This document shows, piece by piece, positions 46,401 to 46,899 of a stretch of 64,000 nucleotides of DNA. The stretch is from Octopus sinensis. Lineage: Eukaryota. Under the pieces are notes generated by a model that did no database searches, was not told where the DNA came from, and was given only the letters and a program-made list of their open reading frames with translations. Numbering within the stretch: position 1 is the stretch's first letter; the number at the start of each line of letters is the position of its first letter. The position numbers and the translations under genes are program-made. The stretch covers positions 66,848,464 to 66,912,463 of the forward strand of contig NC_043011.1 of NCBI RefSeq assembly GCF_006345805.1, read 5' to 3'.

Positions 46401-46814
46401 CTGAAAATATTTCGAATTAATGTGAAAAATTAGTTTCAAAAGCAATAATAGATTCTCAAACCTATTCCCATGCGAAAAATTATCATCTGCTGAATATAGA
46501 AACCATGATAGAGCAATCGATTACAGATCTTACAAAATAGATTGTCAAAAGCAATTAAAACCACTGCAAGCATAAAGGTTTATGACGTTATTTCAATCGC
46601 TGTACGCCCTATGCCCCATTATTTAGCATTGAATTGCGAGCTAAATATCATTCCTTCTTCCTTCGCTCGATTGTTTCATCAAAGGTGATTTAAAGAAAAT
46701 TAAAGATAGTTTAGATTTTAAAAAAAACAATGATTTTTAAAAAGTCAATTCCTCAGTCGATGCCTTTTAATGGAAATATAATGAACACAAGGCAACTACT
46801 TAGCGGGTACTTAC

Positions 46815-46899
46815 GCAACTCTAAATACATAAAGCCATAAACTGATGGAAACAAACTTTGGATATTCTCCAGATGCAAGATCTAAACTGATTGAACTTT
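46815..46899 (-). CDS. CRG5 exon 3 (R)KFNQFRSCIWRISKVCFHQFMALCI*SC with in-frame TAG and shifted donor
   Basis: Same acceptor as 16952; 8-nt insertion; ancestral donor GTAAGT->CTAAGT; a new GTAAGT at 46814-46809 gives an 85-nt phase 2->0 exon; TAG at 46823-46821. Confidence 0.75.

What the first reader, a model, noticed from the sequence alone, without database searches (positions are those of the whole stretch)
46801..46899. CRG5 exon 3: compensated rearrangement leaves one in-frame UAG - secreted variant or editable stop
Seen: relative to CRG3 there is an 8-nt insertion, loss of the ancestral donor (GT->CT) and of the sixth Cys codon (TGC->TAC), and a new GTAAGT donor that restores phase 0. 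The shifted frame supplies a new Cys (ALCI), then TAG, then SC, then the open exon 4. Stopping at TAG gives a 70-aa precursor that still has six mature Cys and no anchor. The stop is 6 nt before the last junction, so the usual 50-nt rule predicts NMD escape. Inference: a soluble paralog derived from an anchored one. Speculative: A-to-I editing, which is extensive in coleoid cephalopods, would turn UAG into UIG (Trp) and restore the anchored form.
Basis: partly seen in the sequence, partly recalled or inferred. Interest (0 to 1): 0.8.

Follow-up and report, generated by a model that had tools for sequence, protein, structure and literature searches.

The report
Frameshifted octopus cysteine-rich gene copy
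One copy of a small, octopus-only, fast-evolving gene for a secreted cysteine-rich protein carries an 8-base duplication that exposes a stop codon; it is most likely a recently broken or shortened duplicate, and nothing here shows that RNA editing rescues it.

Summary
Every sequence statement in the finding checks out: the 8-nt insertion, GT->CT at the old donor, TGC->TAC, a new GTAAGT donor in phase 0, ALCI-TAG-SC, a 70-aa product with six mature Cys, and an open exon 4. The gene belongs to a four-exon family that HMMER finds only in Octopus (O. bimaculoides LOC128249758/LOC128249756, O. vulgaris CAI9735856.1). The window is about 99% identical in substitutions to O. vulgaris chromosome OX597831.1. 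Outgroups show that the insertion, the donor loss and the Cys6 loss are unique to CRG5. Exon 3 is 88 nt in four other copies. CRG5, not CRG3, keeps the ancestral exon 4, but a 100-nt deletion has removed its last 8 codons. The TAG is an ancestral off-frame triplet exposed by the frameshift. Read through, the product has the canonical Cys5-x11-Cys6 spacing but seven Cys. No extended RNA duplex surrounds the UAG. The array holds many broken fragments, and CRG3 is intact. Best reading: a young disabled or null copy (0.5). Rivals: a functional soluble truncation (0.27), stop bypass by editing (0.07), assembly error or polymorphism (0.08). The perfect in-phase donor is rarer than chance (about 0.2%) and stays unexplained. 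Interest is modest.

The parts
54002..54038 (-). CRG5 exon 1: MKYCVVFFLVIF plus 1 nt; donor GTAAGT
   Evidence: Identical peptide at 27752-27716 (CRG3) and 7614-7578. Same junction as in XP_052830203.1.
52319..52415 (-). CRG5 exon 2 (97 nt, three Cys): AVSYRHECNRIGKQHCPSTFVDPLQDTQGFC
   Evidence: 20.6% diverged from CRG3 exon 2, while the 900 nt of intron upstream are 3.3% diverged.
46815..46899 (-). CRG5 exon 3 (85 nt; 88 nt in four other copies): KFNQFRSCIWRISKVCFHQFMALCI*SC
46827..46834 (-). 8-nt insertion (near-tandem duplication TTTATGGC/TTTATGTA). It supplies the new TGT Cys codon at 46829-46827. Its placement is ambiguous by a few bases.
   Evidence: Absent from CRG3 and from both O. 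bimaculoides exon 3 sequences.
46821..46823 (-). In-frame TAG (A at 46822). The same TTTAGAG is present out of frame in CRG3 (GAT TTA GAG).
46809..46814 (-). New donor GTAAGT (GTAAGTA with 46808). Seen only in CRG5 among the five exon 3 sequences aligned over this stretch.
46807..46809 (-). TAC at the place of the conserved Cys6 codon TGC; now at intron positions +6 to +8
46802..46803 (-). Former donor, GT -> CT
   Evidence: GGTAAGTA is conserved in CRG3 and in both O. bimaculoides paralogs.
46317..46400 (-). CRG5 exon 4, open in phase 0 (27 codons plus TAG). 94% identical to exon 4 of O. bimaculoides LOC128249758 up to 46327.
46326..46327 (-). Junction of a 100-nt deletion relative to O. bimaculoides (L001 24284-24383). 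The deletion removes the last 8 codons (QYMTTNSI), the stop and 73 nt of 3' UTR.
16300..27752 (-). CRG3, the intact paralog used as comparator. Exons: e1 27752-27716, e2 22810-22714, e3 16952-16865, e4 16386-16300; 102 aa.
   Evidence: HMMER E = 8e-18 to XP_052830203.1.
38994..39583 (-). Third exon 3 / exon 4 pair ('c39'): e3 39583-39496 (88 nt, donor GTACGT, Cys5 replaced by Tyr), e4 39071-38994. No exon 1 or 2 of its own was found.

Best explanation
CRG5 is the counterpart, in an Octopus vulgaris-group genome, of O. bimaculoides LOC128249758 (isoform X1).

That gene belongs to a tandem, octopus-restricted, four-exon family. Each member encodes a signal peptide, a roughly 55-aa six-Cys domain predicted to be helical, and a short hydrophobic C-terminal tail.

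After a duplication in the O. vulgaris lineage produced CRG3 and CRG5, an 8-bp near-tandem duplication in CRG5 exon 3 shifted the frame by +2. This brought a pre-existing off-frame TAG into frame four codons later, so translation stops there.

The nearby changes are probably parts or aftermath of one local error-prone event, or neutral change in what is now untranslated sequence. These are GTAAGTA created 11 nt upstream of the old donor, the old donor GT->CT, and Cys6 TGC->TAC. The 100-nt deletion in exon 4 is a further lesion.

The 'compensation' (net -3 nt, exon 4 in phase, a TGC in the Cys6 slot) follows largely from the local sequence:
- TGCATATGTGC holds two TGC triplets exactly 8 nt apart.
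- ATATGT, directly after the first TGC, is the only near-donor site.

The copy is therefore most likely a young pseudogene or null allele in a birth-and-death array, while CRG3 carries the function.

Shown: the lesions, and the direction of change for the insertion, the donor loss and the Cys6 loss. Also shown: family membership and orthology of exon 4. Inferred: loss of function, and the single-event origin.
For: - Direction of change: the insertion, the donor loss and the Cys6 loss are unique to CRG5 against CRG3 and two O. bimaculoides paralogs. Exon 3 is 88 nt in CRG3, c39, Obim LOC128249758 and the O. vulgaris CAI9735856 gene.
- The TAG lies in TTTAGAG, shared with CRG3, so it was present when the frame shifted.
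- Second lesion: the 100-nt deletion at the end of the exon 4 ORF.
- The conserved Cys5-x11-Cys6 spacing is lost in the truncated product (x7), and read-through gives 7 Cys.
- Context: the window holds many family fragments. These are an orphan exon 1 (7614-7578), degenerate exon 1 copies at about 36530 (no GT donor) and about 3100 (ATA for ATG), and an exon 2 at 62884-62788 with its donor replaced by (AT)n. There is also c39 without Cys5, and a pseudo exon 4 at 44729-44610 with two stops.
- An intact paralog, CRG3, is present.
- No extended duplex at the UAG.
Against: - A perfect, in-phase GTAAGT(A) donor together with loss of the old one is rare under independent random substitution (0.07-0.24%). 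It hints at continued selection on splicing, or at a templated event that I could not reconstruct.
- All other CRG5 splice sites, exon 1, exon 2 and its three Cys are intact.
- Substitutions specific to CRG5 before the insertion (3 synonymous, 8 non-synonymous) are no more numerous than those specific to CRG3 (2 synonymous, 12 non-synonymous).
- Exon 4 is still 94% identical to the O. bimaculoides ortholog, against 84-86% for its flanks. The lesion is therefore young, and decay cannot yet be told from function.
- No expression data could be reached.
Confidence: 0.5

Rival explanations
1. Functional soluble truncation. The 8-nt duplication created a 70-aa precursor (about 52 aa mature) that ends at the TAG, has six Cys and lacks the tail. 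The protein is secreted instead of membrane-held. After the old donor was lost, selection for removal of intron 3 (transcript stability, 3' end formation) built the new donor ATATGT -> GTATGT -> GTAAGT(A). On this reading its phase is incidental.
For: - The perfect new donor is unlikely by chance.
- All other signals are intact.
- There are six Cys, and the new Cys lies 4 residues (about one helical turn) before the canonical Cys6 on a predicted helix.
- Exons of this family evolve faster than introns: exon 2 is 20.6% diverged against 3.3% for intron 1, and dN/dS is about 1.1 with all compared Cys kept. Novelty is therefore plausible.
- The stop is 6 nt before the last junction.
Against: - The Cys5-Cys6 spacing, invariant at x11 in five members, becomes x7.
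- The path needs a deleterious donor loss to be fixed and then repaired.
- The anchor function of the tail is unproven.
- No transcript or protein evidence was reached.
- Neighbouring copies are decaying.
Confidence: 0.27
2. Stop bypass. A-to-I editing of UAG to UIG (read as Trp), or translational read-through, yields a full-length product ...FMALCIWSC|NTSPSGKVLWNIVGASKIFLLPLSLVT. One gene would then give both a soluble and a tailed form, and the donor shift was selected because it restores the exon 4 frame.
For: - Only a bypass gives the phase restoration a coding benefit, because the TAG predates the frameshift.
- The read-through product aligns colinearly with XP_052830203.1 (53% identity, one 1-aa gap), with the terminal Cys at the canonical x11 spacing.
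- The exon 4 ORF is open and well conserved.
- UAG is the triplet ADARs prefer (established knowledge).
- Stop-loss UAG->UGG events are an accepted class in coleoid editomes (PMC8382921). A fungal precedent is PUK1 (PMC4817773).
- The base at 46822 is G in the O. bimaculoides ortholog.
Against: - Only a 7-bp hairpin holds the UAG.
- Pre-mRNA z = -0.9 and spliced mRNA z = +0.4.
- The best long-range duplex (-33.6 kcal/mol) is weaker than the mean for shuffled targets (-36.9).
- The product would have 7 Cys and would lack the Pro after Cys6 seen in CRG3 and XP_052830203.1.
- The tail end is deleted.
- UAG-A is not a known leaky context (established knowledge).
- The chain of selected steps is long for a gene with an intact paralog nearby.
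Confidence: 0.07
3. Assembly or polishing artefact, or a heterozygous null allele of the sequenced animal. On this reading the true or common CRG5 lacks the TAG or the insertion.
For: - The window differs from O. vulgaris GCA_951406725.2 by about 1% substitutions plus microsatellite indels.
- It has an N gap (4984-5083) where that assembly holds three exons of a paralog.
- That reference is an ONT assembly polished with short reads (PMC10700109).
- The paralogs are about 90% alike, which invites mis-polishing.
Against: - An 8-nt non-homopolymer insertion plus four nearby substitutions, none of them present in CRG3, is not a typical error and cannot come from CRG3 reads.
- The TTTAGAG context is shared with CRG3.
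Confidence: 0.08

Closest known systems
Octopus bimaculoides LOC128249758 (XP_052830203.1) and LOC128249756 (XP_052830201.1); O. vulgaris CAI9735856.1. All are annotated 'uncharacterized' or 'hypothetical'.
   Same: Four exons with the same junction phases, a signal peptide, Cys1-5 at the same spacing, and an exon 4 peptide GKVLWNIVG.SKIFLLPLSL. The CRG5 read-through is 53% identical to XP_052830203.1.
   Different: CRG5 alone has the 8-nt insertion, the in-frame TAG, the shifted donor, no Cys6-Pro, and a truncated exon 4 end.
Duplicated (non-processed) pseudogenes in birth-and-death families of secreted cysteine-rich peptides
   Same: A tandem array, many fragments, one copy with a frameshift and premature stop next to an intact paralog, and exons diverging faster than introns.
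   Different: The lesion is accompanied by a perfect new splice donor that restores the phase. This is not expected of plain decay.
Loss of a membrane anchor giving secreted paralogs (Ly6/uPAR -> SLURPs and three-finger toxins; from established knowledge)
   Same: The proposed logic: a truncation before the C-terminal hydrophobic signal turns a tethered small disulfide-rich protein into a soluble one.
   Different: This is not that family. There is no Pfam hit to UPAR_LY6, there are six rather than 8-10 Cys, and the fold is predicted helical, not beta. Anchoring of the octopus proteins is untested.
Stop-loss A-to-I recoding (UAG -> UGG): coleoid editomes (PMC8382921); Fusarium PUK1 (PMC4817773)
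   Same: An in-frame UAG inside an otherwise colinear ORF, in an octopus.
   Different: No editing data and no duplex evidence here.
RAMP ectodomains (three-helix bundle, three disulfides, C-terminal membrane helix)
   Same: They are the top Foldseek matches of the AlphaFold model of XP_052830203.1. The layout is similar: signal peptide, helical six-Cys domain, hydrophobic C-terminus.
   Different: The matches are not significant (E > 2, TM about 0.24), the model confidence is moderate (pLDDT 65), and the domain is much shorter. This is a lead only.

Membership tests
Octopus LOC128249758/LOC128249756 family | Significant sequence similarity to annotated members | tested here: met
   CRG3 against XP_052830203.1: phmmer E = 8e-18. 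CRG5 read-through against the same protein: BLASTP 2e-34 as a pairwise E-value, 53% identity.
Octopus LOC128249758/LOC128249756 family | Four coding exons: exon 1 has 12 codons plus 1 nt, exon 2 is 97 nt, exon 3 is 88 nt ending in phase 0, and exon 4 encodes the tail | tested here: met
   CRG5 has the same junctions. Exon 3 is 85 nt rather than 88, but still ends in phase 0.
Octopus LOC128249758/LOC128249756 family | Six Cys, with Cys5-x11-Cys6 invariant | tested here: not met
   Up to the TAG the spacing is x7. x11 holds only if the TAG is read through, and then there are 7 Cys.
Non-processed pseudogene | A disabling lesion relative to intact orthologs and paralogs, derived in this copy | tested here: met
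   Frameshift and premature stop, loss of Cys6, loss of the donor, and the 100-nt exon 4 deletion are all unique to CRG5.
Non-processed pseudogene | No expression or no function | not testable with these tools
   No RNA or protein data could be reached. The word-index searches are unreliable here, because one search failed to find a known relative.
GPI-anchored or membrane-tethered protein | A C-terminal hydrophobic signal after a small-residue site | tested here: inconclusive
   Mean Kyte-Doolittle score of the last 10 residues: 1.1 (CRG3), -0.1 (XP_052830203.1), 1.85 (XP_052830201.1), 2.98 (CAI9735856.1). No dedicated predictor was available.
Ly6/uPAR (three-finger) domain | Pfam UPAR_LY6 match; 8-10 Cys; beta fold | tested here: not met
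   No Pfam family above threshold. The predicted fold is helical.
ADAR recoding site | The target A lies in an extended imperfect duplex | tested here: not met
   Only a 7-bp hairpin; no unusual stability; no long-range partner better than for shuffled targets.
ADAR recoding site | A-to-G mismatch between RNA and DNA | not testable with these tools
   No reads available.
NMD-immune premature stop (50-55 nt rule) | The stop lies less than 50 nt upstream of the last exon junction | tested here: met
   The TAG ends 6 nt before the 46815|46400 junction. Whether the rule applies in cephalopods is assumed.

The most novel reading that the evidence does not exclude
The UAG at 46823-46821 is a regulated recoding switch. 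Unedited mRNA would give a secreted six-Cys peptide. Edited (UIG = Trp) mRNA would give a tailed, membrane-associated form with the canonical Cys6 position. On this reading the donor shift was selected because it keeps exon 4 in frame for the edited form.
Probability: 0.05. Interest if true: 0.8.

Novelty: new member of a known kind. Interest (0 to 1): 0.3.

Why it matters
If CRG5 is simply a young pseudogene, it is an ordinary by-product of birth-and-death evolution. Its value is as a dated example within an uncharacterised, octopus-only family of small secreted or tethered proteins whose exons diverge faster than their introns.

If the truncated form is functional, it would show how a tethered protein becomes soluble in one small mutational step.

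If the UAG is edited, it would be a compact case of editing choosing between two protein fates. That can be tested directly with existing octopus RNA data.

The family itself may deserve more attention than this one exon. It has no known domain, is predicted helical with six Cys, and its annotated isoforms join one first exon to different downstream exon sets.

Tried and rejected
- **Word-index protein searches.** Searches with CRG3 and with the CRG5 read-through found nothing. I do not count this as absence: one search failed to retrieve XP_052830203.1, which shares at least 11 five-residue words with the query.
- **Exact look-ups.** The look-up of a LINE ORF found nothing, and a spliced CRG5 product was not accepted.
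- **Rfam** on the window: no match.
- **Pfam** on CRG3 and the CRG5 read-through: nothing above threshold.
- **Organism from the LINE reverse transcriptase:** the best hit is only 53% identical, mostly bird and turtle CR1-type elements, so it is uninformative.
- **More exon 2 / exon 3 copies** by phase-aware ORF scans: mostly microsatellite noise.
- **Ly6-like three-finger fold:** rejected (helical model, no Pfam hit).
- **TAG arose after the compensation:** rejected, because TTTAGAG is shared with CRG3.
- **Alternative donors or exon 3 skipping** that would avoid the TAG: read by eye only. The other GT sites I saw in the exon are weak, and the ones I followed gave early stops or shifted frames.
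- **Simple template-switch model** for the GTAAGTA heptamer: I could not reconstruct one.
- **CRG5 region of GCA_951406725.2:** no route with these tools.
- **Accession search in papers:** no paper mentions these loci.

Full report
**1. The observation**

On the minus strand, an exon with a good acceptor (ccctttccag) runs from 46899 to 46815 and ends TGC|GTAAGT.

Aligned with CRG3, CRG5 shows these differences:
- 8 extra bases, a near-tandem copy (TTTATGGC TTTATGTA against TTTATAGA);
- ATATGT -> GTAAGT;
- TGC -> TAC;
- G|GTAAGT -> G|CTAAGT.

The shifted frame reads GCT TTA TGT ATT TAG AGT TGC, which is A L C I * S C. The TAG is at 46823-46821.

I rebuilt the whole gene:

| Exon | Coordinates | Content |
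|---|---|---|
| 1 | 54038-54002 | MKYCVVFFLVIF plus 1 nt |
| 2 | 52415-52319 | 97 nt, three Cys |
| 3 | 46899-46815 | 85 nt |
| 4 | 46400-46317 | open in phase 0 |

CRG3 is intact and encodes 102 aa (e1 27752-27716, e2 22810-22714, e3 16952-16865, e4 16386-16300).

**2. What the gene is**

A full HMMER scan of 1.84 billion representative proteins with CRG3 found four relatives, all from Octopus:
- XP_052830203.1 and XP_052830204.1 (LOC128249758, O. bimaculoides);
- XP_052830201.1 (LOC128249756, O. bimaculoides);
- CAI9735856.1 (O. vulgaris).

All four are unnamed. The RefSeq model XP_052830203.1 has the same exon junctions as my models.

The first 46 residues of CAI9735856.1 are encoded without a mismatch at window 10471-10334. 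The matching stretch of O. vulgaris chromosome OX597831.1 (locus L002) is 97-98.5% identical to the window, about 1% by substitutions. The window is therefore from the O. vulgaris group: another individual, another assembly, or O. sinensis.

On structure and domains:
- There is no Pfam domain.
- An AlphaFold model of XP_052830203.1, built from a seven-sequence alignment, has moderate confidence (pLDDT 65 overall, 75-85 in the Cys domain). It shows three helices and is not a three-finger fold.
- The best PDB matches are RAMP ectodomains, but they are not significant (E > 2).
- The family alignment shows C-x7-C-x14-C, then three more Cys, with Cys5-x11-Cys6 invariant in five members.
- The C-terminal tails are only moderately hydrophobic in CRG3 and XP_052830203.1, and clearly hydrophobic in two other members. 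'Anchored' is therefore plausible but untested.

**3. Direction of change and orthology**

I fetched the O. bimaculoides array (L001). Exon 3 of LOC128249758 and of LOC128249756 both lack the 8-nt insertion. Both keep GGTAAGTA at the donor and TGC for Cys6.

Exon 3 is 88 nt in CRG3, c39 (39583-39496), LOC128249758 and the O. vulgaris CAI9735856 gene. The insertion, the donor loss and the Cys6 loss are therefore derived in CRG5. The GTAAGT is unique to CRG5. The ancestral state at its first base is uncertain, because the O. bimaculoides ortholog also has G there.

CRG5 exon 4 is the ortholog of LOC128249758 exon 4 (94% over 81 nt). CRG3's 3' end (16221-16533) is 92.7% identical to the c39 unit (38915-39219) and is orthologous to another O. 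bimaculoides unit. CRG5 thus keeps the ancestral layout, and CRG3 is the younger, chimeric duplicate.

CRG5 exon 4 also carries a 100-nt deletion (junction 46327/46326). It removes the last 8 codons (QYMTTNSI), the native stop and 73 nt of UTR.

**4. The TAG and the 'compensation'**

TTTAGAG is shared by CRG3 (read there as GAT TTA GAG) and CRG5. Nine other differences from O. bimaculoides in the same 17 nt are also shared by both copies. The triplet was therefore already present when the insertion shifted the frame, and the stop appeared at once.

The donor shift makes the net change -3 nt, so exon 4 is in phase. Reading through the TAG gives ...C-FHQFMALCIWS-C|NTSPSGK. This aligns colinearly with XP_052830203.1, with the terminal Cys at the canonical x11 spacing.

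Much of this follows from the local sequence:
- The ancestral TGCATATGTGC has two TGC triplets exactly 8 nt apart, so an 8-nt insertion slides the first into the codon slot of the second.
- ATATGT, directly after the first TGC, is the only near-donor site.

What chance does not readily give is the perfect donor itself. With four random substitutions in the 19 nt after the TAG, GTAAGT arises in 0.24% of trials, and in 0.07% together with loss of the old donor. This is post hoc, but it is a real residue that the pseudogene reading does not explain well. It could come from selection on splicing, or from a clustered, possibly templated, mutational event. The new GTAAGTA repeats the old donor heptamer 11 nt upstream.

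**5. Tests of the editing idea**

- The 251-nt pre-mRNA around the TAG folds no better than shuffles (z = -0.9).
- The best duplex between the 61 nt around A46822 and any 80-nt window of intron 2 to exon 4 is -33.6 kcal/mol. That is weaker than the mean best value for shuffled targets, -36.9.
- In the spliced mRNA, the UAG sits in a 7-bp hairpin created by the insertion. The whole mRNA has z = +0.4.

This is far from the extended duplex that ADARs usually need. The read-through product would also have seven Cys and would lack the Pro that follows Cys6 in CRG3 and XP_052830203.1.

Stop-loss UAG->UGG editing inside ORFs is already treated as a known class in coleoid editomes (PMC8382921). It has a fungal precedent in PUK1 (PMC4817773). 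The idea is therefore not new in kind and is unsupported here, but it is not excluded without RNA reads.

**6. Family dynamics**

Between CRG3 and CRG5:

| Region | Divergence |
|---|---|
| Exon 2 | 20.6% |
| 900 nt of intron 1 upstream of exon 2 | 3.3% (Fisher p = 4e-9 against exon 2) |
| Exon 3 | 19% |
| Intron 3 | 9% (p = 0.007 against exon 3) |

dN/dS is about 1.1, with both rates raised and all five comparable Cys kept. Substitutions polarised with O. bimaculoides are 3 synonymous and 8 non-synonymous on the CRG5 branch. On the CRG3 branch they are 2 and 12. Upstream of the lesion, CRG5 therefore does not look more decayed than the intact copy. This fits a young lesion and does not decide between loss and change of function.

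The window is littered with family fragments:
- an orphan exon 1 at 7614-7578;
- degenerate exon 1 copies at about 36530 and about 3100;
- an exon 2 at 62884-62788 whose donor is replaced by (AT)n;
- c39 with Cys5 changed to Tyr;
- a pseudo exon 4 at 44729-44610 with two stops.

This raises the prior that CRG5 is another casualty.

**7. Verdict**

| Reading | Probability |
|---|---|
| Recently disabled copy or null allele | 0.5 |
| Functional soluble truncation | 0.27 |
| Stop bypass by editing or read-through | 0.07 |
| Assembly error or polymorphism | 0.08 |
| Other | remainder |

The family is new in the sense of being uncharacterised, but this exon is a new member of a known kind of event. 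Existing O. vulgaris RNA and DNA reads would settle the matter quickly.

Noticed in passing
window 52319-53315 vs 22714-23708; 46804-46899 vs 16865-16952: Exons 2 and 3 of the two paralogs are about 20% diverged, while the adjoining intron 1 is 3.3% and intron 3 about 9%. Both synonymous and non-synonymous sites are raised (dN/dS about 1.1), and all compared Cys are kept. Either the introns were homogenised by gene conversion or the exons evolve at an accelerated rate.
   Followed up: partly
window 16221-16533 vs 38915-39219; L001 14602-14853 and 24109-24461: CRG3 is chimeric. Its exons 1-3 are of the CRG5 type, but its exon 4 region is 92.7% identical to the c39 unit and is orthologous to a different O. 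bimaculoides unit. CRG5 keeps the ancestral exon 4.
   Followed up: yes
window 4984-5083 (N run) and 7578-7614; L002 10507-15192: In O. vulgaris GCA_951406725.2, the exon 1 matching window 7614-7578 (peptide identical to CRG5 exon 1) is followed by exons 2-4, which make up the body of CAI9735856.1. Those exons are missing from the window, where an assembly gap sits. The window is about 1% diverged from that assembly.
   Followed up: partly
window 10334-10471 (-): The annotated first exon of CAI9735856.1 (MAKAIREIADC...) has no signal peptide. The model reads through the usual exon 2 acceptor (…ILGAVSY). The true first exon is probably the MKYCVVFFLVIF exon, so this looks like a likely mis-annotation.
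   Followed up: no
L001 9895-24311 (O. bimaculoides LOC128249758): RefSeq joins one first exon to two different downstream exon sets 10 kb apart (isoforms X1 and X2). The X2 ORF starts upstream in another frame and skips exon 2. This could be cassette-like use of the array or a model artefact. In the window, CRG5 exons 1-2 could likewise splice to the c39 exons at 39583/39071.
   Followed up: no
window 62788-62884 (-), 36491-36592 (-), about 3060-3135 (-), 44610-44729 (-), 39496-39583 (-): Family debris: an exon 2 whose donor is replaced by an (AT)n run; an exon 1 copy with GTAAGT changed to GCAGTT; an exon 1 copy with ATA for ATG; an exon 4 of the CAI9735856 type with two stops; and an exon 3 with Cys5 changed to Tyr.
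   Followed up: partly
window 18320-19362 (-), 40926-43634 and 57719-60415, 12506-15027, 20318-22324, 50453-50926: Transposable elements fill much of the array. There is a Tc1/mariner-like ORF inside CRG3 intron 2, two CR1-type LINE copies in inverted orientation (93% identical), and other reverse-transcriptase or endonuclease fragments.
   Followed up: no
tool behaviour: the search for homologous proteins reported no candidate for a query that shares at least 11 five-residue words with XP_052830203.1. That protein is in the collection. Its negative results here are not evidence of absence.
   Followed up: yes
P0121 model, PDB search: The family domain is predicted as three helices with three disulfide-capable Cys pairs. 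The top structural matches are RAMP1 and RAMP3 ectodomains, which are not significant.
   Followed up: partly
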